A stretch of 64,000 bases of DNA, from the sequence record KX397371.1. One strand, given 5' to 3'. Every line of letters starts with the position of its first letter. Position 1 is the stretch's first letter. The translations under genes were made by a program, and so were the position numbers. Under the pieces are notes generated by a model. The model ran no database searches, was not told the DNA's origin, and saw only the letters and a list, made by a program, of their open reading frames with translations. Positions 834 through 17,766 of this stretch are shown here, in pieces.

Positions 834-858
834 AATTACAAGAATACCTTGTGATATG
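834..858 (+). promoter_or_regulatory. phage middle/late-type promoter (AATTAC-N15-TATG)
   Basis: AATTAC 834-839 and TATG 855-858; same spacing at 3745, 4119 and 60457; resembles phiKZ nvRNAP promoter elements; lies upstream of tRNA-Trp. Confidence 0.65.
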
Positions 859-2289: not shown

Positions 2290-3129
2290 ATGAGAAAGGT
2301 GCTTTTCGGAATACTTGCAGCGTTGACGTTTAGCATGTCCGCAGTCGCGGCAGACGAAGTAGTGATTACCACAGGACAACAGGGCCTGACCTATAACTCG
2401 GTCTATGGCGTTAATCTGGCCGGTGCCATCAGCGAGTTCGGTACTCGTGCACGGGTCATCCCGTCGAAGGGGTCGTTAGACAACCTCGACAAAGTTGCCG
2501 CCGGTGAAGCCCAGATTGGTTTCACGCAGGCAGATGCTTTCCAGTTCTGGCGCGCTAAGCACCCGAACGAAGCGCAGAACGTTGACATCGTCGGTCAGCT
2601 GGCCCGTGAATGTGTCTGGGTCGCTGTCAAGAAAGATGGCAAAGTTAAAGATGCGAAAGATTTAACCGATGGCGTGAAAATCGCAGTCGGTGAACCGGAC
2701 TCTGGCTCCTACGCCAGTTGGCAATATCTGCAACAGTTGGTGAAAGAGTATTCCAAAGCGGAAACTTACGCCAAGGGCGGCATCCGTTCGTTGTCCAAAG
2801 TGGCAACGGGTGAATACGACGCATTCCTGTGGGTATCTGCGCCGGATAAAAGCAACAAATTCCTCGAAGCGGTCAATCAAGACAGTTCTGGTTTAGAGCT
2901 GATTGACATGAGCACATGGAACGTCAACGACAAACTGCCTAACGGCCAGTCTGTGTACACGAAAGAAACGGCCAAGACAGACAAGACCGCGTTCTTCGGT
3001 AAGAAAGTTGATGTTCCGTGCACCACCACACTCGTCGTGGCCAACACTGACGCTGGTGATGATCTGCTCGAAACCGTTTCTACCATCCTCCTGAAAAACA
3101 ATTCACGAGTGATGGGGGACAAAAAATAA
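2290..3129 (+). CDS. TAXI-family TRAP solute-binding protein
   Basis: N-terminal signal peptide (…MSAVAA/DEV); ITTGQQGLTY, SKGSLDNLDKV, IGFTQAD and AVGEPDSGS motifs fit the TAXI fold. Confidence 0.8.
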   Translation: MRKVLFGILAALTFSMSAVAADEVVITTGQQGLTYNSVYGVNLAGAISEFGTRARVIPSKGSLDNLDKVAAGEAQIGFTQADAFQFWRAKHPNEAQNVDIVGQLARECVWVAVKKDGKVKDAKDLTDGVKIAVGEPDSGSYASWQYLQQLVKEYSKAETYAKGGIRSLSKVATGEYDAFLWVSAPDKSNKFLEAVNQDSSGLELIDMSTWNVNDKLPNGQSVYTKETAKTDKTAFFGKKVDVPCTTTLVVANTDAGDDLLETVSTILLKNNSRVMGDKK

Positions 3130-3135
3130 AAATAT

Positions 3136-3735
3136 GTACTGACCCAGTGCATCTTTTCGGGCTGGGTAGGGTTAATGTCCCTACCTGCGCGGTGTTCGTT
3201 AAGGCTGGTAACGTTCGCTAAGACCTATCGCATACCCGTAAGCCGATAGCAGCCGGTTACACAAAGAACTATCCATGTGGTAGGTAACCGACCGTTCACG
3301 ATCTCATTAGGTGAGCAAATAATCTATGCAAGGACTTCTAGGATTTGTGCTCGACATGATGGGCAGCTTACGCCGCCTCATCAAGCAGTTACGAATCTGG
3401 AAGCTTGCCCATTACTGGTTTACAGGCGAAAAGGCATCTCGTGAGAGTGTGCCATGCAAACTGCGTATTTACATTAGTATGTTCACTGCGGTGAGCATAG
3501 GTCAAGCCCCGGAACGATAAGCCGGTCAGCTACGCCTGTAAAATACAATCTGAAAATCATAATGGGATTAAGTTCCCAGATTTGAAAAGGCGACTGTGTG
3601 TCGTCGGCGATAACCCCCCGTCGTGGACTCGGTTATCCCAAAGGTAATGTGAAAGGGGTTGGTGCTTGGAGACGCTAAGACCGGCGGATACGCTGGCTCA
3701 GAAGAAGAAGTCCATCAACCCCGTTCTCACCTGAG
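3136..3735 (+). ncRNA. candidate large ornate non-coding RNA (~600 nt)
   Basis: Region without a credible CDS, starting at a TATG; more than 10 stems including long-range 3419-3428/3533-3542, 3655-3663/3714-3722 and 3307-3312/3729-3734, plus loop pseudoknot GGACTTC/GAAGTCC. Confidence 0.7.
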
Positions 3736-3744
3736 TAACACCCT

Positions 3745-3767
3745 TTACAAGGCGTTACTTATATATG
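3745..3767 (+). promoter_or_regulatory. middle/late-type promoter (TTAC-N15-TATG)
   Basis: TTAC 3745-3748 and TATG 3764-3767; same spacing as the other copies. Confidence 0.55.
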
Positions 3768-3789
3768 CGAAAGCGAGGTGAACATGGGA

Positions 3790-4110
3790 ATGTATCGTGA
3801 AGGCCCTGAAAGCACGGTGAGTCACCGTAGTCATGATTACTCTGTGGATGCATTGCTGGATATAGCGGAACGCCATAGCCTCGTTCAAATTCCAGTGTCT
3901 AGAATAGAATGGATTTTAAACGAGACTACGCTCGATGACGAGCGGGTTAAGAATGCAGATACGGATTATCCAATAATCGTGCTGCACGAAGGAAGTTTGT
4001 ATATTGTATTAGACGGTGCCCATCGCCTTGCGAAGGCGGTAGCCGAAGGCAAAGACACCATCGCAGCCAAGATATTGGTGCCTGCGAATTTACCGAAACC
4101 GGTACGATAA
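3790..4110 (+). CDS. ParB/sulfiredoxin N-terminal-domain protein
   Basis: YPIIV...VLDGAHRLAKA matches the ParB/Srx DGxHR motif; GAGGTG SD 9 nt before ATG 3790. Confidence 0.7.
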   Translation: MYREGPESTVSHRSHDYSVDALLDIAERHSLVQIPVSRIEWILNETTLDDERVKNADTDYPIIVLHEGSLYIVLDGAHRLAKAVAEGKDTIAAKILVPANLPKPVR

Positions 4111-4116
4111 AAGTCT

Positions 4117-4141
4117 AATTACAAGTTTACACTGTATTATG
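4117..4141 (+). promoter_or_regulatory. middle/late-type promoter driving the tRNA/ncRNA cluster
   Basis: AATTAC 4117-4122 and TATG 4138-4141; upstream AAAGTCTAATTACAAG is identical to the promoter at 834. Confidence 0.7.
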
Positions 4142-4223
4142 TCGGAAACCCGATTTGATGTTGCACAGAGCGTTACGCTGCGGCGTTTGCTGGTGTGCAG
4201 GGTTAGGTCGGGATTCTGGCACC
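4141..4223 (+). ncRNA. rod-like small RNA ending in ACC
   Basis: Starts at the predicted +1 G; 4141-4156 pairs with 4205-4220 (one mismatch); TGCAC/GTGCA inner stem; followed by ACC. Confidence 0.5.
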
Positions 4224-4228
4224 TATTT

Positions 4229-4314
4229 GGCGGGTTACTCAAGCGGTCAACGAGAGCAGACTGTAAATCTGTTGCCTTCGGGCTTCGTAGGTTCAAATCC
4301 TTCACACGCCACCA
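4229..4314 (+). tRNA. trnY: tRNA-Tyr(GTA)
   Basis: Class II cloverleaf, CTGTAAA loop, long variable arm, CCA; G5·A68 and T·T mismatches. Confidence 0.9.
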
Positions 4315-4320
4315 AACAAT

Positions 4321-4538
4321 GGTACCTGTCACAGCAGCCCTTGAGGCTTACGCGATGATGACTGGTCGCCCATTTTACCGGGTAACACATTCCTGCCAGC
4401 GCGCTATTGCCGCGAAGGTTTGCCCCCGGTGTTGTGCGTTATTCGGGTCTACCCACCATCTGCGGATGGTGCGTTGATGTCTCGATATACGCCATAGGGA
4501 CGCCTTGAGAACTCCGTGAAATTCGGAGAGGTACCACC
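4321..4538 (+). ncRNA. tRNA-like acceptor/T module enclosing a ~180-nt structured insert
   Basis: GGTACCT (4321-4327)/AGGTACC (4529-4535) followed by ACC; adjacent 5-bp stem with 7-nt loop CTCCG-TGAAATT-CGGAG. Confidence 0.6.
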
Positions 4539-4540
4539 CA

Positions 4541-4609
4541 TTCTTGTGTTTCCTTATCCTGAAGACATTCGTAAGACAAATCCATTCATGGTCGAGGAAA
4601 CACAGAACC
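4541..4609 (+). ncRNA. small RNA element copy A (paralog of 5843-5913)
   Basis: 13-bp closing stem (1 bulge) TTCTTGTGTTTCCT/AGGAAACACAGAA then CC; interior shares TCCYGAA-GACATTC...CATGGTC with copy B. Confidence 0.6.
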
Positions 4610-4615
4610 TATTCA

Positions 4616-4691
4616 GGTGCTATCGTCTAGTGGCCGAGGATACTACCCTGTCACGGTAGAGACCGGAGTTCGATTCTCCGTAGCACCGCCA
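4616..4691 (+). tRNA. trnD: tRNA-Asp(GTC), copy 1
   Basis: Cloverleaf GGTGCTA/TAGCACC, CTGTCAC loop, GCCA end. Confidence 0.95.
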
Positions 4692-4699
4692 TTTTAAAA

Positions 4700-4775
4700 T
4701 GCGTCTTAGCTCAGTTGGTAGAGCGCTCCCCTGATAAGGGAGAGGTCACTGGTTCAAGTCCAGTAGATGCAACCA
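4700..4775 (+). tRNA. trnI: tRNA-Ile(GAT)
   Basis: Cloverleaf TGCGTCT/AGATGCA, CTGATAA loop, ACCA end. Confidence 0.95.
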
Positions 4776-4781
4776 AACACT

Positions 4782-4860
4782 GGTGTATGTAGTTCAGTTG
4801 GTTAGAATTCTGGCTTGTGACGTCAGAGGTCGGTGAGTTCGAATCTCCCCATACACCCCA
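4782..4860 (+). tRNA. trnH: tRNA-His(GTG)
   Basis: G-1:C73 pair, TTGTGAC loop, CCA end. Confidence 0.95.
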
Positions 4861-4867
4861 ATTTAAT

Positions 4868-4944
4868 AGTGCTGTAGTCGAGCGGTTTAAGACGCCTGCC
4901 TGTCACGTAGGAGATCGTGGGTTCAAATCCCATCAGCACTGCCA
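4868..4944 (+). tRNA. trnD: tRNA-Asp(GTC), copy 2
   Basis: Cloverleaf AGTGCTG/CAGCACT, CTGTCAC loop, GCCA end. Confidence 0.95.
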
Positions 4945-4950
4945 CATTAC

Positions 4951-5027
4951 ATTCCCGTCATCTAGTTGGTCCAGGATACGACACTTTCACTGTCGGTACA
5001 CGAGTTCGAATCTCGTCGGGAATACCA
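4951..5027 (+). tRNA. trnE: tRNA-Glu(TTC)
   Basis: Cloverleaf ATTCCCG/CGGGAAT, CTTTCAC loop, ACCA end. Confidence 0.95.
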
Positions 5028-5032
5028 TTTGT

Positions 5033-5123
5033 AGAGAATTGACTGAGTTGGTTTAAGGTGCTCCCCTGCTAAGGGAGTGTATGCGAAAGTGTACCATTGG
5101 TTCGAATCCAATATTCTCTGCCA
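5033..5123 (+). tRNA. trnS: tRNA-Ser(GCT)
   Basis: Class II cloverleaf AGAGAAT/ATTCTCT, CTGCTAA loop, long variable arm, GCCA end. Confidence 0.93.
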
Positions 5124-5161
5124 TGTTCTCTTGCTGTGGGAAATAGAAGCGAACGTAGAAA

Positions 5162-5240
5162 CGCCGGTTAGCTCAAAGCTTAGAGCGTCTCATCTTCGGA
5201 TGAGAAGGTTGGGGGCGCAACCCGAAATCCCTATCGGCAA
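5162..5240 (+). ncRNA. anticodon-less tRNA-like element (UUCG-capped anticodon arm)
   Basis: GCCGGT/ATCGGC acceptor, TA-GCTC...GAGC D arm, TCTCATC-TTCG-GATGAGA arm, enlarged T loop, no CCA. Confidence 0.6.
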
Positions 5241-5500
5241 CGGCCTGCTTGTCAGGATTAGAAACATCTACGTGGATGGGTACTTCTACAGCAAGAACAA
5301 AACAGTGGGAGCATTGTCCACTGTGACACCGGCAAAGGTTTCGACCTTGCGGGTTGGGCGGAAGCCCGATGTTCCCCCGAACGCTGGCCTTCTGGCCAAT
5401 ACAGTGAAAGCTTACCCTTGCCGATGATCACCTCTTCTGCTGCTGCCAACACACTGTATAACCAGAATCAGTCCTGCCTTAAATGGCAAGCGTTCACCCT
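5241..5500 (+). ncRNA. candidate structured RNA between tRNA-like modules
   Basis: Hairpins ACAGTGG/CCACTGT, AGGT-TTCG-ACCT, GGGC-GGAA-GCCC and ATACAGTG/CACTGTAT; no credible ORF. Confidence 0.45.
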
Positions 5501-5504
5501 TTAC

Positions 5505-5582
5505 GTTTCCTCAAGGCGGCTTGGGGTGTTATCTCTCGGCTCTGTTGGGTAACATCGTGGTTCAACTCCATGGGAAACACCA
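5505..5582 (+). ncRNA. tRNA-shaped RNA with canonical T loop and ACCA but no anticodon loop
   Basis: GTTTCCT/GGGAAAC then A-CCA; CAAG/CTTG mini D stem; ~9-bp arm with 12-nt loop; GTGG-TTCAACT-CCAT. Confidence 0.65.
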
Positions 5583-5588
5583 AACAAT

Positions 5589-5680
5589 GGCTCCGTAGCT
5601 AAATCGGTAGAGGCAGACTTTAATTAGTTCTCCAACGATTTTATAATCGCGTGGTGTAGGTTCAAGTCCTACCGGAGCAA
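5589..5680 (+). pseudogene. degenerate tRNA with two central hairpins and no CCA
   Basis: GCTCCG/CGGAGC acceptor and perfect T arm GTAGG-TTCAAGT-CCTAC; broken D stem; no 7-nt anticodon loop. Confidence 0.55.
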
Positions 5681-5756
5681 GAGCACTGCTGTTAAGTTGG
5701 TTAACACCCGACCCATACTCGGATATTCGCACGTTCGATTCGTGCCAGTGCTCGCC
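5681..5756 (+). tRNA. atypical tRNA with CAT anticodon (Met/Ile2-like)
   Basis: 8-bp acceptor GAGCACTG/CAGTGCTC, 5-bp D stem GTTAA/TTAAC, CCCATAC loop (C33), canonical T arm, G-CC end. Confidence 0.7.
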
Positions 5757-5764
5757 CTTATTTA

Positions 5765-5840
5765 GACTCTGTAGTTCAGTTGGTAGAACGGTGGACTGTT
5801 AATCCATATGTCGCAGGTTCGAGTCCTGCCAGAGTCGCCA
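5765..5840 (+). tRNA. trnN: tRNA-Asn(GTT)
   Basis: Cloverleaf GACTCTG/CAGAGTC, CTGTTAA loop, GCCA end. Confidence 0.95.
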
Positions 5841-5842
5841 CA

Positions 5843-5913
5843 TTTTGCATTGCCCGAGTCCCGAATGACATTCCGGAAAAATATCATCCATGGTCACGGG
5901 CAGTGCAGAACCA
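5843..5913 (+). ncRNA. small RNA element copy B (paralog of 4541-4609)
   Basis: 14-bp closing stem TTTTGCATTGCCCG/CGGGCAGTGCAGAA followed directly by CCA; conserved interior. Confidence 0.6.
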
Positions 5914-6111
5914 AAATCCCAGCCTTCGCAGAAAAAGCTTACCTGCATTAGCGGTCCCCTGCGGGGGTTGGGTACCACCTTTGTCCGTTTTGTTTTTTTC
6001 TTTCAATTGCCTGGCGGTATTGGTGGGAACAAAACGGGTAAAGCCCTAGCGGGGGAAAAGCCGTTAACAACAACAGAAGCAGTAAAAACAGAAGTAAAAG
6101 CAGGAGTAGTT

Positions 6112-6924
6112 ATGTTTACTATCTTACGCAAAATCAATGGTAACCGCACACCAACCGAACACGAATCCCCTACGCTGGGTGATACGAAGTCACAAGTGTT
6201 CAAAGATGCGATGTCGCTTCTTACCGAATCCAATAACGTGCATAACTGCATGGATTCTGGGATGGATGCGAAGCCGTGGATTAACGGCAAACCCAAACCG
6301 ATTGAGGAGTGGGTAGAGCGCTTTAAGAAAGCGTACGGCGCGACAGACTCAGACAACCAAGAACTGGTTTCTCTGGTCAGTGAACTCGCACCGGGAATGT
6401 TTGACAAAGCCAATGCGCGTTTTGCATCGGACTTTGGTCAACTGGAAGAAGCCTTCCTGAAAGATACCGGGCAAACTATCATCTGGAAATGTCCGAACGG
6501 ACTCCCGATTGATATCCAGTTCCAAAACATTCCCCGTCAGTCTGTTGAAACACTACATACCACGCTCGATTTCATCGAAGCGGATGAGTTGAAGTTTGCG
6601 GTGTTCAACAGCAAGGCGTTGTGGGATGGGTATAACTCCGCTGAACTGTTTGGCGGTGAAGCCACCGAGATTTCCTCGGTAGAACTCCAACACGTTTACT
6701 TTGACGATACGGCCATGCCGCAAGAAGCGGTGCTCAAAGCCAACCGTCGTGGTACCCGCACTATGGAACAGGTCATCGGGGTGCTTGCTTATGGCAGCTC
6801 CGAACAACCCGACCCAACCACAGGCAACGTGCCGGTCACAGTGATGACCTACGAGTTTATCTACCAAGGCGATGAAGTCTACATTACGAACCGTCACGGT
6901 AAGACTGTGGACTCCATCCGTTAA
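6112..6924 (+). CDS. hypothetical protein (270 aa)
   Basis: AGGAG SD before ATG 6112; the upstream part of ORF-track 5890..6924 is probably non-coding leader. Confidence 0.8.
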   Translation: MFTILRKINGNRTPTEHESPTLGDTKSQVFKDAMSLLTESNNVHNCMDSGMDAKPWINGKPKPIEEWVERFKKAYGATDSDNQELVSLVSELAPGMFDKANARFASDFGQLEEAFLKDTGQTIIWKCPNGLPIDIQFQNIPRQSVETLHTTLDFIEADELKFAVFNSKALWDGYNSAELFGGEATEISSVELQHVYFDDTAMPQEAVLKANRRGTRTMEQVIGVLAYGSSEQPDPTTGNVPVTVMTYEFIYQGDEVYITNRHGKTVDSIR

Positions 6925-17682: not shown

Positions 17683-17710
17683 GTAATTGCACCCTTTCGA
17701 GTGCAATTAC
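17683..17710. terminator. inverted repeat / bidirectional terminator
   Basis: Perfect 10-bp IR GTAATTGCAC/GTGCAATTAC between convergent genes; T-rich tract follows on the minus strand. Confidence 0.6.
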
Positions 17711-17766
17711 AAGTTATTCCCTATTATATGTAAACCGGAATGGTTTACGGGGGAGGGAGTAAATTC

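What the first reader, a model, noticed from the sequence alone, without database searches (positions are those of the whole stretch)
3136..5913. A non-coding RNA island: canonical tRNAs interleaved with about eight non-canonical, mostly CCA-type RNAs
Seen: every gap between the real tRNAs folds into a unit closed by a 5'/3' stem, and most end in (A)CC or ACCA like a tRNA 3' end (4141-4223, 4321-4538, 4541-4609, 5505-5582, 5843-5913). Two more are tRNA-shaped without a usable anticodon (5162-5240, 5589-5680). A phage promoter at 4117-4141 starts exactly on the first unit. Established: RNase P/RNase T and the CCA enzyme read acceptor/T geometry, and several defence toxins attack tRNA (anticodon nucleases; CCA-modifying toxSAS/CapRel and MenT). 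Inference: the island yields non-decoding tRNA mimics acting as decoys or regulators in the cytoplasm, where the phage nucleus cannot shield translation. This is my best candidate for an undescribed system.
Basis: partly seen in the sequence, partly recalled or inferred. Interest (0 to 1): 0.9.

Follow-up and report, generated by a model that had tools for sequence, protein, structure and literature searches.

The report
Conserved non-decoding RNAs in phage tRNA array
The gaps in the tRNA gene cluster of this giant Erwinia phage hold about a dozen conserved, folded RNAs that cannot decode, several of them tRNA bodies without an anticodon; related phages keep them even after losing the real tRNAs, but their job is still unknown.

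Summary
The window is the first 64 kb of Erwinia phage vB_EamM_Parshik, a SPN3US-like jumbo phage.

- **What was found.** Between 4141 and 5980, nine canonical tRNAs are interleaved with 11 non-canonical units, and a twelfth element (F3) lies upstream at 3655-3722.
- **Structure under selection.** F1, F3, U1, U4b, U5, U6, F2, F7, F8 and F9 show compensatory base changes in relatives.
- **Persistence.** SPN3US, Proteus phage 7 and SPFM17 have lost every canonical tRNA of the island but keep U1, U6, U7, F1 and F3.
- **No known family.** No Rfam family other than tRNA matches, and GenBank annotates nothing there, or a spurious ORF.
- **Promoter.** AATTACAAG-N12-TATG ends on the first base of U1, and the same motif precedes tRNA-Trp.
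- **3' ends.** Most units end in NCC after a closing helix, the part of a tRNA 3' end that RNase P RNA pairs with.

The best reading is one precursor cut by the tRNA-processing machinery into stable tRNA-top-half mimics and hairpins. The nearest known case is T4 rnaC/rnaD, whose role is also unknown.

The parts
3136..3325 (+). F4: conserved non-coding stretch upstream of gp9 (hairpin CUAUCG...CGAUAG, which reads CUACGG...CCGUAG in SPAsTU)
   Evidence: 77-81% identity over parts of it in ChrisDB, SNU9, Caitlin and SPAsTU. The covarying hairpin was read by eye and was not tested statistically.
3326..3520 (+). gp9, a small conserved ORF (64 aa). This part of the 'island' is probably protein-coding.
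   Evidence: The ORF is open, with shared RLW..WFTG..GQAP motifs, in the Parshik clade, SNU11, SPN3US, Proteus7 and SPFM17. It matches a PHROG of unknown function.
3655..3722 (+). F3: ~70-nt structured RNA. A 10-bp covarying closing stem encloses the invariant internal loops CUUGGAGRCGCUAAGACC and CAGAAGAAGAAGUCC.
   Evidence: Present in 18 of 18 relatives. It has 22 pairs, 7 of them with double changes; 98% of cells pair, and 0 of 500 shuffles reach the observed score. Fold z -3.6. The exact motif is absent from 185,579 bacterial genomes. No feature is annotated under the surrounding 3521-3777 in any of the 40 phage records listed (48 matched).
3744..3767 (+). Promoter-like TTTACAAG-N12-TATG in front of gp10
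   Evidence: Same spacing as the AATTACAAG-N12-TATG motif.
4117..4141 (+). Phage promoter motif AATTACAAG-N12-TATG. G4141 is the predicted +1.
   Evidence: There are three exact AATTACAAG on the + strand in 64 kb (0.24 expected). Each is followed 12-13 nt later by TATG: at 834 (before tRNA-Trp), 4117 and 17705. In phiKZ the late promoter is TATG with G as +1, and the middle promoters carry AAanTTACc near -24 (PMC4666361).
4141..4223 (+). U1: 83-nt hairpin that starts at the predicted +1 and ends GGC-ACC
   Evidence: z -6.8. In 15 of 18 relatives it is 79-84 nt, always starts at the G of TATG and always ends GGCACC. It keeps 29-33 bp at 61-66% identity between clades, with 3-8 G-U pairs.
4229..4314 (+). 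Canonical tRNA-Tyr(GUA)
   Evidence: ARAGORN; Rfam 47.1 bits. GenBank mislabels it tRNA-Asp.
4321..4539 (+). F2: 219-nt RNA with a 7-bp acceptor-type stem (GGUACCU/AGGUACC), a T-type hairpin (CUCCG-UGAAAUU-CGGAG) abutting the stem, a large variable insert and a 3' ACCC
   Evidence: z -3.1. Homologues of 118-220 nt occur in 11 of 18 relatives and always start about 6 nt after the CCA of the preceding tRNA. The acceptor covaries (GACACUG/CGGUGUC and others), with 3 pairs showing double changes. Tails in IMG/VR contigs are ACCC, ACCU or GCCC.
4541..4609 (+). F1 copy A: hairpin with a 12-bp closing helix, conserved interior CCYGAAGACAUUC...CAUGGUC and a CC tail
   Evidence: z -4.3. Covariance model R1 scores it 87.8 bits. 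Covariation.
4616..5123 (+). Six canonical tRNAs (Asp, Ile, His, Asp, Glu, Ser), all with an encoded CCA
5162..5240 (+). U4b: tRNA-shaped RNA with a 7-bp stem and a UUCG tetraloop in place of the anticodon arm; no CCA
   Evidence: z -2.7. In SNU43 the stem UCUCAUC/GAUGAGA becomes UCUUACC/GGUAAGG and the loop changes from UUCG to CUAG. No tRNA hit in Rfam even at E<=10.
5307..5378 (+). F8: 72-nt cloverleaf with a GGAA tetraloop hairpin in the T position and a CC tail
   Evidence: z -2.7. The acceptor GGGAGCA/UGUUCCC is GGGAGCG/CGUUCCC in SPAsTU and SNU29. Also present in Proteus7 and SPFM17.
5379..5499 (+). F7: 121-nt RNA with a 7-bp terminal stem (GAACGCU/AGCGUUC), D-like and T-like hairpins and a 3' ACCC
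   Evidence: z -3.5. The 3' part is 94-97% conserved in ChrisDB, SNU9 and Caitlin. In Caitlin the stem reads GGACG../..CGUCC and the tail is ACCA.
5505..5582 (+). U5: tRNA-like RNA with a canonical T arm and an encoded ACCA, but a 10-bp 'anticodon' stem closed by a 12-nt loop
   Evidence: z -2.1. Compensatory changes in the long stem and acceptor in SNU10 and pSal04. No tRNA hit in Rfam. Paralogue of the ChrisDB-type U6.
5589..5680 (+). U6: anticodon-less tRNA body with a conserved acceptor, D and T arms, an invariant G1.A72 mismatch and A73. It runs straight into U7 with no encoded CCA.
   Evidence: Rfam tRNA 31.4 bits. In 14 distinct sequences, acceptor pairs 2-7 are 100% paired and every position shows double changes. 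The middle is hypervariable: UUUG, AUCG or UUCG tetraloops in the SPN3US clade and 6-8-nt loops in the ChrisDB clade.
5681..5757 (+). U7: tRNA(CAU)-like gene ending G-CCC. In Parshik the anticodon loop is CCCAUAC (C at position 33).
   Evidence: Rfam tRNA 38.9 bits, found only with the sensitive filters; ARAGORN misses it. Relatives have the canonical CUCAUAA loop and are annotated tRNA-Met or Ile2.
5765..5840 (+). Canonical tRNA-Asn(GUU)
5843..5913 (+). F1 copy B: same family as 4541-4609, tail CCA
   Evidence: z -4.1. R1 scores it 80.3 bits. The family is found in 17 of 18 relatives, including SPN3US, Proteus7 and SPFM17, and there are only two copies in the 64-kb window.
5918..5979 (+). F9: hairpin with a covarying 12-14-bp closing stem and conserved interior YUACCUGCAU, tail UACCACC, followed by a U-rich tract (5980-6003)
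   Evidence: z -2.3. The stem is CCCAGCCUUCGCAG/CUGCGGGGGUUGGG here, GGUCACCGUGUC/GACACGGUGACU in SPN3US and GGCCACACCCC/GGGGUGUGGCU in SPAsTU.

Best explanation
From 4141 to about 6000 the island is most likely one transcription unit. It starts at the G of a phage TATG promoter and runs through nine canonical tRNAs and eleven non-canonical units (U7 is a borderline, tRNA(CAU)-like case).

Each non-canonical unit is built like a tRNA-processing substrate: a terminal helix followed by N-C-C, often with a T-type hairpin stacked on that helix. The inferred route is that host RNase P cuts the 5' side of every unit, which also frees the 3' end of its upstream neighbour. Exonucleases then trim back to the CC, and the CCA enzyme can complete the end. 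U6 would be left ending exactly at its discriminator A73.

The products would be discrete, stable RNAs that cannot decode:
- tRNA bodies with a closed or free-varying 'anticodon' arm: U4b, U5, U6, F8;
- acceptor/T-framed RNAs with large inserts: F2, F7;
- a 12-bp minihelix-like hairpin present twice: F1.

I think their most likely job is to occupy proteins that read the acceptor/T 'top half' of tRNA, or specific partners of their invariant loops. U1 and F9 would mainly cap and protect the two ends of the precursor. This is the T4 rnaC/rnaD situation on a larger scale.

**Shown:** the structures, their selection, their persistence without tRNAs, the promoter motif and the NCC ends.
**Inferred:** co-transcription, RNase P/CCA processing, stability and trans action.

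**Likelihoods:**
- real selected RNAs: about 0.9
- tRNA-pathway processing: about 0.65
- trans-acting top-half mimicry: about 0.35-0.4
For: - **Folding.** Every named unit folds better than shuffles.
- **Covariation.**
  - F1: 7 pairs with double changes, 0 of 500 shuffles reach the score, 97% paired against 42-52% for slid partners.
  - F3: 98% paired, 33 double-changed cells against 10.8 expected.
  - U6: acceptor pairs 2-7 all paired in 14 distinct sequences, with double changes at every position.
  - U1: the hairpin is kept at 61-66% identity.
  - U4b, U5, F2, F7, F8 and F9 have compensatory changes.
- **Strand.** Many G-U pairs on the + strand mean RNA in this orientation, not DNA hairpins.
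- **Persistence.** SPN3US, Proteus7 and SPFM17 have no canonical island tRNA yet keep U1, U6, U7, F1 and F3.
- **Specific partners.** Invariant internal loops in F1 and F3 and a near-invariant junction in F2 point to specific partners rather than mere folding.
- **Promoter.** AATTACAAG-N12-TATG occurs three times on the + strand (0.24 expected for the 9-mer), including upstream of tRNA-Trp, and G4141 is the first base of U1. The phiKZ precedent is in PMC4666361.
- **3' ends.** NCC is kept while the fourth base varies between A, C and U. Established knowledge: bacterial RNase P RNA pairs with C74 and C75.
- **Not coding.** The gp18 frame is not conserved.
- **Precedent.** T4 rnaC has a terminal stem plus a canonical T arm, rnaD ends GCACC, and both lie in the tRNA cluster.
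Against: - No expression, end-mapping or processing data exist for any SPN3US-like phage in the searchable literature.
- The tail is not always NCC. U4b and some F1 and F9 homologues lack it.
- U1 starts at the predicted +1, so it needs no RNase P cut, and a short +1 hairpin also follows the 17705 promoter. That suits a plain 5' stabiliser.
- Selection for correct folding and processing of a precursor could explain the stems without any trans function.
- No complementary targets of the conserved loops were found in the window.
- No candidate partner protein was identified.
- U7 may be an ordinary tRNA-Met/Ile2 in most relatives.
Confidence: 0.5

Rival explanations
1. Cis-only scaffolding. The units are punctuation and stability elements of the tRNA precursor. 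Terminal helices with NCC let RNase P separate neighbours without RNase E, U1 and F9 protect the ends, and the excised pieces have no function of their own.
For: - Terminal helix plus NCC in most units, and short spacers that are often AACAAU.
- U1 sits at the predicted +1. Only its ends and shape are conserved, not its interior.
- A short +1 hairpin also follows another copy of the promoter.
Against: - SPN3US, Proteus7 and SPFM17 keep U1, U6, U7, F1 and F3 with no canonical tRNA left to process.
- F1 and F3 have invariant internal-loop sequences, and F2 an almost invariant junction, that processing does not need.
- F1 is kept in two copies.
Confidence: 0.25
2. The units are decoys or sponges for host defence toxins that attack tRNA: anticodon nucleases, or enzymes that modify the CCA end.
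For: - U6 conserves only the acceptor, D and T arms, so recognition is of the tRNA top half.
- The canonical set includes Tyr, His, Asn and Asp, the four GUN-anticodon tRNAs.
- Phage tRNAs are known to counter tRNA-cleaving defences (10.1101/2023.03.15.532788, 10.1101/2024.01.02.573894 and PMC13096335, listed).
Against: - There is no direct evidence.
- U4b, U5 and U6 have no anticodon loop, so they cannot mimic the substrate of an anticodon nuclease.
- Only U5 and F1b encode CCA.
- The units are conserved across phages of Erwinia, Salmonella and Proteus, which is not typical of fast-evolving counter-defence genes.
Confidence: 0.2
3. Decaying tRNA pseudogenes and neutral spacer, with no function.
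For: - tRNA content turns over quickly between relatives.
- HNH homing endonuclease ORFs are inserted in some islands.
- Parshik's U7 has a damaged anticodon loop with C33.
- U5 is broken by an insertion in SNU6.
Against: - Stems are kept by compensatory changes in ten units.
- F3, F1 and U6/U7 are present in 16-18 of 18 genomes, against 14-15 of 18 for the best-kept tRNAs.
Confidence: 0.04
4. Protein-coding ORFs (gp18; ORF 4139-4477; the annotated N-terminus of gp21) or DNA-level sites (hairpins for recombination, homing or replication).
For: GenBank annotates gp18 at 5131-5427 and starts gp21 at 5890. PHROGs contains families built from these ORFs.
Against: - gp18 has a TTG start, and its frame shifts in SNU10, SNU6 and SNU43.
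- Relatives start the gp21 homologue about 200 nt later.
- ORF 4139-4477 runs across tRNA-Tyr.
- G-U pairs are frequent and strand-specific.
Confidence: 0.02

Closest known systems
Phage T4 rnaC and rnaD (species 1 and 2 RNAs)
   Same: - They are small RNAs encoded inside a phage tRNA cluster, on the tRNA strand and next to tRNA genes, with a homing endonuclease gene in the cluster.
- rnaC has a terminal stem plus a canonical T arm and a large insert, like F2, F7 and U6.
- rnaD ends GCACC, like U1's GGCACC.
- Their roles are unknown (PMC3014915).
   Different: - There is no sequence similarity, and the F1 model finds nothing in T4.
- Here there are about a dozen units in at least eight families rather than two.
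- Several units are anticodon-less tRNA bodies.
- They outlast the tRNAs in some genomes.
- The host phage is a nucleus-forming jumbo phage with its own RNA polymerases.
Hairpin-type RNase P substrates (E. coli 4.5S RNA precursor; phage phi80 M3 RNA), recalled from established literature
   Same: A long terminal helix is followed by an RCC-type 3' end. As I recall it, 4.5S ends ACCC, as F2 and F7 do.
   Different: There is no homology. Cleavage by RNase P is not shown here.
YrlA / bacterial Y RNAs (tRNA-mimicking module bound by Ro/Rsr)
   Same: A non-decoding RNA with a tRNA-like acceptor/T/D module, also reported in phages (my recollection).
   Different: The Rfam YrlA model scores 25.7-29 bits against a threshold of 69, and the hits merely overlap T arms of tRNA-like genes. 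No Ro-binding stem was identified. I did not check for a Ro orthologue.
Functional tRNA-operon spacers in E. coli (3'ETS-leuZ sponge RNA), from memory
   Same: RNA released from a tRNA precursor by the tRNA-processing machinery goes on to act in trans.
   Different: Those act by base-pairing with sRNAs. Here the units are highly structured, and I found no complementary targets.
GOLLD and ROOL large RNAs found next to tRNAs in phages and prophages
   Same: Ornate, conserved non-coding RNAs of unknown function placed beside phage tRNA genes.
   Different: No Rfam hit. The units here are small (about 70-220 nt) and individually framed like tRNAs.

Membership tests
tRNA (Rfam RF00005) | Covariance-model score at or above the gathering score of 29 bits | tested here: met
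   This is met only for U6 (31.4 bits) and U7 (38.9 bits). In SPN3US they score 37.1 and 30.6 bits. U1, F1, F2, U4b, U5, F7, F8 and F9 give no tRNA hit even at E<=10, so for them the feature is not met.
tRNA (decoding) | A 7-nt anticodon loop with U33 and a conserved anticodon | tested here: not met
   - U6: the loops are UUUG, AUCG or UUCG tetraloops, or 6-8-nt variable loops, across relatives.
- U4b: the UUCG tetraloop becomes CUAG in SNU43.
- U5: a 12-nt loop sits on a 10-bp stem.
- U7: CCCAUAC with C33 in Parshik, but the canonical CUCAUAA in relatives.
tRNA (decoding) | A 3' CCA, either encoded or addable at the discriminator | tested here: inconclusive
   All nine canonical tRNAs of the island encode NCCA. 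U5 has ACCA and F1b has CCA. F2 and F7 have ACCC, and U7 has GCCC. U6 ends at A73 directly before G1 of U7. Addition of CCA cannot be tested with these tools.
T4 rnaC/rnaD-type stable RNAs of phage tRNA clusters | Non-tRNA RNA genes embedded in a phage tRNA cluster on the tRNA strand, closed by a terminal helix and with tRNA-like elements | tested here: met
   The T4 reference is.
T4 rnaC/rnaD-type stable RNAs of phage tRNA clusters | Sequence or model homology to rnaC or rnaD | tested here: not met
   blastn-short gives no hit below E 0.9. Model R1 finds nothing in the T4 locus.
T4 rnaC/rnaD-type stable RNAs of phage tRNA clusters | Accumulate as discrete stable RNAs in infected cells | not testable with these tools
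   No transcriptome of a SPN3US-like phage was found.
RNase P substrates | A terminal helix followed by a 3' N-C-C that can pair with the RNase P RNA | tested here: met
   Tails read:
- U1: ACC
- F2: ACCC
- F1a: CC
- F1b: CCA
- F8: CC
- F7: ACCC
- U5: ACCA
- U7: GCCC
- F9: ACCACC
- U4b and U6: no encoded tail.
RNase P substrates | Cleaved by RNase P at the 5' end of the helix | not testable with these tools
   This needs an in-vitro M1 RNA assay or an rnpA temperature-sensitive host.
YrlA / Y RNA (RF02553) | Score at or above 69 bits | tested here: not met
   25.7 bits at 5727-5789; 29 and 23.4 bits in ChrisDB.
tmRNA | A tRNA-like domain plus a tag reading frame, detectable by ARAGORN or Rfam | tested here: not met
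   ARAGORN finds no tmRNA. Rfam finds none.
GOLLD, ROOL, group I intron and other large Rfam RNAs | Any Rfam hit in 3000-6200 | tested here: not met
   Only tRNA passes. All other hits are far below their thresholds.
phiKZ-type phage promoter | TATG with G as +1, plus a TTAC-containing element near -24 | tested here: met
   AATTACAAG lies at 4117-4125 and TATG at 4138-4141. The same architecture occurs at 834-858 and 17705-17730. The definition comes from PMC4666361. Activity was not tested.

The most novel reading that the evidence does not exclude
SPN3US-like nucleus-forming phages carry a dedicated suite of tRNA-framed, non-decoding RNAs: anticodon-less tRNA bodies, acceptor/T-framed RNAs with inserts, and a duplicated 12-bp minihelix. 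These are matured by the host tRNA machinery and act in trans. They would either titrate host factors or immune effectors that recognise the tRNA acceptor end or elbow, or serve as cofactors of phage proteins. That would make them a counter-defence or takeover module that matters more to the phage than its own tRNAs do.
Probability: 0.2. Interest if true: 0.85.

Novelty: new variant of a known kind. Interest (0 to 1): 0.65.

Why it matters
- **An old open question becomes testable.** Phage tRNA clusters are usually read only as tRNA supplies. T4's two extra stable RNAs have gone unexplained for fifty years. This island supplies at least eight conserved RNA families with clear covariation. Natural 'experiments' show they are kept when the tRNAs are lost.
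- **A tractable system exists.** SPN3US on Salmonella is a laboratory system.
- **Link to current work.** If the units act in trans on tRNA-reading proteins, they bear directly on current work on tRNA-targeting immunity and on how nucleus-forming phages protect translation in the cytoplasm.
- **Practical gains.** The families are candidates for Rfam. Several annotations in these genomes are wrong: gp18, the gp21 start, the anticodon label of PARSHIK_11, and probably SPN3US_0003.

Tried and rejected
- **Rfam.** I searched at gathering thresholds over the whole window and at E<=10 over 3000-6200, and also searched the SPN3US and ChrisDB islands. Only tRNA passed.
- **Host-type signals.** The sigma-70 promoter and intrinsic terminator scan showed no enrichment over shuffles.
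- **Base-pairing targets.** A search for complements of the conserved F1, F2, F3 and U5 loops in the window found only chance 8-9-mers.
- **Host origin of F3.** The exact motif is absent from 185,579 bacterial genomes.
- **Neighbouring proteins.** gp9, gp10, gp18 and gp21 match only unnamed PHROGs. They give no Pfam hit, and gp10 and gp21 give no meaningful PDB hit.
- **Whole-array fold.** A global MFE fold of 4141-6010 recovers the unit boundaries only for 4141-4857 and 5843-5910 and mixes up the middle, so I did not use it.
- **U1 alignment.** MAFFT alignment of U1 across clades is unreliable. I replaced it with per-sequence folds and pairwise identities.
- **Homology to T4 rnaC/rnaD.** None.
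- **Literature.**
  - No description of this island and no SPN3US-like transcriptome turned up.
  - The supplement of the 10,006 viral structured-RNA survey (PMC10690425) is not held, so I could not check for overlap.
- **Interior of F2.** It was not resolved. RNAalifold supports only the acceptor stem, a D-position stem and the T-type hairpin.

Full report
**Source and setting.** The window is bases 1-64000 of Erwinia phage vB_EamM_Parshik (KX397371.1, genus Machinavirus), matched at 100% identity. Its relatives fall in Machinavirus, Erskinevirus, Wellingtonvirus and Seoulvirus (SPN3US-like). One of them, Asesino, is an experimentally shown nucleus-forming member of Chimalliviridae (PMC11724907). 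SPN3US carries the jumbo-phage multisubunit RNA polymerases (PMC7598289). I fetched the homologous island from 17 relatives.

**What standard tools see.**
- ARAGORN finds nine tRNAs in 4229-5840, plus tRNA-Trp at 883.
- Rfam at gathering thresholds finds the same ten genes and nothing else in the 64 kb.
- With sensitive filters Rfam adds a tRNA at 5682-5753 (38.9 bits).
- No other family comes near its threshold. YrlA scores 25.7 bits against 69.
- GenBank annotates nothing in the gaps except two doubtful ORFs. The 40 phage records listed (of 48 matched) for 3521-3777 carry no feature there.

| Unit | z-score |
|---|---|
| 4141-4223 | -6.8 |
| 4541-4609 | -4.3 |
| 5843-5913 | -4.1 |
| 4321-4538 | -3.1 |
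| 5162-5240 | -2.7 |
| 5505-5582 | -2.1 |
| 5589-5680 | -1.8 |

I found further units of the same build:
- F8 at 5307-5378, a clean 72-nt cloverleaf with a GGAA tetraloop hairpin in the T position (z -2.7).
- F7 at 5379-5499, with a 7-bp terminal stem and an ACCC tail (z -3.5).
- F9 at 5918-5979.

One gap, 5241-5306, does not fold (z +0.2), so 'every gap' is slightly too strong.

**F1 (4541-4609 and 5843-5913).** These are two copies of one family. A covariance model finds the family in 17 of 18 genomes and only twice in the window. It has 17 pairs. Of the cells, 97% pair, against 42-52% when partners are slid. Seven pairs show double changes, and 0 of 500 shuffles reach the observed covariation score. 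The closing helix is 12 bp, the length of the stacked acceptor and T stems of a tRNA. The interior CCYGAAGACAUUC...CAUGGUC is nearly invariant.

**F3 (3655-3722).**
- It is present in 18 of 18 genomes.
- It has 22 pairs, 98% paired, 33 double-changed cells against 10.8 expected, and invariant internal loops.
- Its exact motif is absent from 185,579 bacterial genomes and occurs only in this phage group in IMG/VR.

**U1 (4141-4223).** In 15 of 18 genomes it is a 79-84-nt hairpin. It always begins at the G of TATG and always ends GGC-ACC. It keeps 29-33 pairs although clades share only 61-66% identity.

**F2 (4321-4539).**
- It has a 7-bp acceptor-type stem that covaries: GGUACCU/AGGUACC here, GACACUG/CGGUGUC and GACACUU/GGGUGUC elsewhere.
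- A T-type hairpin abuts the stem, and an N-CC-(C/U) tail follows.
- Its length ranges from 118 to 220 nt.
- It always begins about six bases after the CCA of the preceding tRNA.

**The tRNA-shaped units.**
- **U4b.** In SNU43 the 7-bp 'anticodon' stem changes from UCUCAUC/GAUGAGA to UCUUACC/GGUAAGG, and the loop changes from UUCG to CUAG. The stem is selected; the loop is not.
- **U5.** It has a canonical T arm and an encoded ACCA, but a 10-bp stem with a 12-nt loop. Compensatory changes occur in SNU10 and pSal04.
- **U6.**
  - *Acceptor stem.* In 14 distinct sequences, acceptor pairs 2-7 always pair and every position shows double changes.
  - *Invariant positions.* The G1.A72 mismatch and A73 never change.
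  - *Variable middle.* It ranges from a tetraloop (UUUG, AUCG, UUCG in the SPN3US clade) to a 40-nt insert. ARAGORN's 'tRNA-Ile(AAU)' is therefore an artefact.
  - *3' end.* U6 ends at A73 directly before G1 of U7. An RNase P cut of U7 would leave U6 ready for CCA addition.
- **U7 (5681-5757).** It is tRNA(CAU)-like and ends G-CCC. Relatives have the canonical loop CUCAUAA, while Parshik and Machina have CCCAUAC.

**The telling comparison.** SPN3US, Proteus phage 7 and SPFM17 have no canonical tRNA left in the island. They still carry F3, U1, U6, U7 and F1, and the latter two also carry F8. Presence across the 18 genomes is:

| Element | Genomes (of 18) |
|---|---|
| F3 | 18 |
| F1 | 17 |
| U7 | 17 |
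| U6 | 16 |
| U1 | 15 |
| tRNA-Tyr | 15 |
| tRNA-Asn | 15 |
| tRNA-Asp | 14 |

The non-decoding units are therefore at least as well kept as the best-kept tRNAs. They cannot exist only to help neighbouring tRNAs mature.

**Strand and coding.**
- G-U pairs are frequent and lie on the + strand. U1 has 3-8 per hairpin, and several F1 columns have them. This points to RNA in the tRNA orientation rather than DNA hairpins.
- gp18 (5131-5427, TTG start) is not a gene. Its frame shifts in SNU10, SNU6 and SNU43, and it runs across U4b and F8 into the start of F7.
- The annotated start of gp21 (5890) lies inside F1 copy B. The conserved start is ATG 6112, behind an AGGAG box.
- gp9 (3326-3520) does look coding.

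**Promoter.**
- AATTACAAG occurs three times on the + strand, against 0.24 expected. Each copy is followed 12-13 nt later by TATG: at 834-858 (24 nt before tRNA-Trp), at 4117-4141 and at 17705-17730.
- A TTTACAAG-N12-TATG variant sits before gp10 at 3744-3767.
- In phiKZ the late promoter is TATG with the G as +1, and the middle promoters have AAanTTACc near -24 (PMC4666361).
- By that precedent, G4141, the first base of U1's closing helix, is the start of transcription.
- Host-type sigma-70 promoters and intrinsic terminators are not enriched.

**The 3' ends.** All nine canonical tRNAs of the island end NCCA.

| Unit | Tail |
|---|---|
| U1 | ACC |
| F2 | ACCC |
| F1a | CC |
| F1b | CCA |
| F8 | CC |
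| F7 | ACCC (ACCA in Caitlin) |
| U5 | ACCA |
| U7 | GCCC |
| F9 | ACCACC |

In metagenomic relatives, F2 ends ACCU or GCCC. What is conserved is therefore N-C-C, not the terminal A. From established knowledge, C74 and C75 are the bases that pair with the P15 loop of bacterial RNase P RNA, and a 3' CC also stops RNase T. E. coli 4.5S RNA, an RNase P substrate, ends ACCC as I recall it. I therefore infer that each unit is framed to be cut out by RNase P. This is inference and is not shown.

**How it most likely works.**
1. One precursor starts at G4141.
2. RNase P cuts at each unit, which also frees the 3' side of the upstream neighbour.
3. Exonucleases trim to CC, and the CCA enzyme completes some ends.
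4. Stable non-decoding RNAs accumulate.

U1 and F9 most likely protect the two ends; another copy of the promoter is also followed by a +1 hairpin. The invariant loops of F1 and F3, the nearly invariant junction of F2, and the top-half-only conservation of U6 point to specific partners. I take these to be proteins that read the acceptor/T half of tRNA.

My estimates are:
- about 0.9 that these are real, selected RNAs;
- about 0.65 that they use the tRNA-processing route;
- about 0.35-0.4 that they act in trans as mimics.

It cannot apply to anticodon nucleases for the anticodon-less units.

**Comparison with what is known.**
- The closest case is T4, which has rnaC and rnaD inside its tRNA cluster next to the segB homing endonuclease.
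- rnaC folds with a terminal stem, a large insert and a canonical T arm (z -4.6). rnaD ends GCACC. Their roles are unknown (PMC3014915).
- There is no sequence homology with the present units.
- Relatives of Parshik also carry HNH homing endonuclease ORFs inside the island.
- Other resemblances are hairpin RNase P substrates, YrlA, E. coli tRNA-spacer sponges, and GOLLD/ROOL. They are functional analogies only; membership fails wherever I could test it.

**Verdict.**
- The kind of thing, extra stable RNAs in a phage tRNA cluster, is known but unexplained.
- The families, their number, the anticodon-less tRNA bodies and their persistence without tRNAs appear undescribed in Rfam, GenBank and the searchable literature.

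Noticed in passing
window 4228-4315: GenBank feature PARSHIK_11 is labelled tRNA-Asp(gtc). ARAGORN and the relatives' annotations give tRNA-Tyr(gta).
   Followed up: yes
window 5131-5427: Annotated gp18 (TTG start) overlaps U4b and F8 and runs into the start of F7. Its reading frame is not conserved in SNU10, SNU6 or SNU43, so it is very likely not a gene.
   Followed up: yes
window 5890-6112: The annotated start of gp21 (ATG 5890) lies inside F1 copy B (the CAUGGUC motif). Relatives start the homologue later. ATG 6112, behind an AGGAG box, is the likely start.
   Followed up: partly
window 834-858, 3744-3767, 4117-4141, 17705-17730: A phage promoter motif, (A/T)(A/T)TTACAAG-N12-13-TATG, recurs on the + strand. 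The copy at 834 precedes tRNA-Trp. The copy at 17705 is followed by a short hairpin that starts at the predicted +1 and then by a Shine-Dalgarno box.
   Followed up: partly
window 3136-3777: A conserved module upstream of the tRNA array: structured leader (F4), small ORF gp9, conserved 3' region with a GGGAUUAAGUUCCC hairpin, and F3. It is kept even in SPN3US. Its relation to the array is unknown.
   Followed up: partly
L013 (SPN3US) 2929-3159; L014, L018: SPN3US, Proteus phage 7 and SPFM17 have lost all canonical island tRNAs. The SPN3US minus-strand ORF SPN3US_0003 (2940-3176) lies over U6, U7 and F1 and is probably spurious. Its 'tRNA-OTHER' feature is U6.
   Followed up: partly
L017 4031-4567; L003 3351-3869: HNH (HNH_3, NUMOD4) homing-endonuclease ORFs are inserted inside the island in pEa_SNUABM_29 and pEa_SNUABM_6. 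In SNU6 the insertion destroys the T arm of U5. This parallels segB in the T4 tRNA cluster.
   Followed up: partly
window 4229-5840: The canonical set contains all four GUN-anticodon (queuosine-family) tRNAs (Tyr, His, Asn and two Asp), plus Ile, Glu and Ser. tRNA content changes quickly between close relatives: Gln, Met, Phe, Leu and Gly come and go.
   Followed up: no
window 5241-5306: This stretch has no significant fold (z +0.2). Yet it holds a 24-nt block, GUGGAUGGGUACUUCUACAGCAAG, that is identical in SPAsTU, where it sits on the other side of F8. This is unexplained.
   Followed up: no
L032 (T4) 2409-2672, minus strand: T4 rnaC carries a canonical T arm (CCGGGUUCGAAUCCCGG) next to its terminal stem, and rnaD ends GCACC. 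The same framing logic may therefore apply to the T4 RNAs.
   Followed up: partly
L007 (ChrisDB) 3368-3422, 3551-3620: More weak tRNA-like hits lie in the gaps of the ChrisDB island: a partial tRNA at 29.9 bits and a mascRNA-like hit at 24.4 bits. Relatives may hold further non-canonical units that are absent from Parshik.
   Followed up: no
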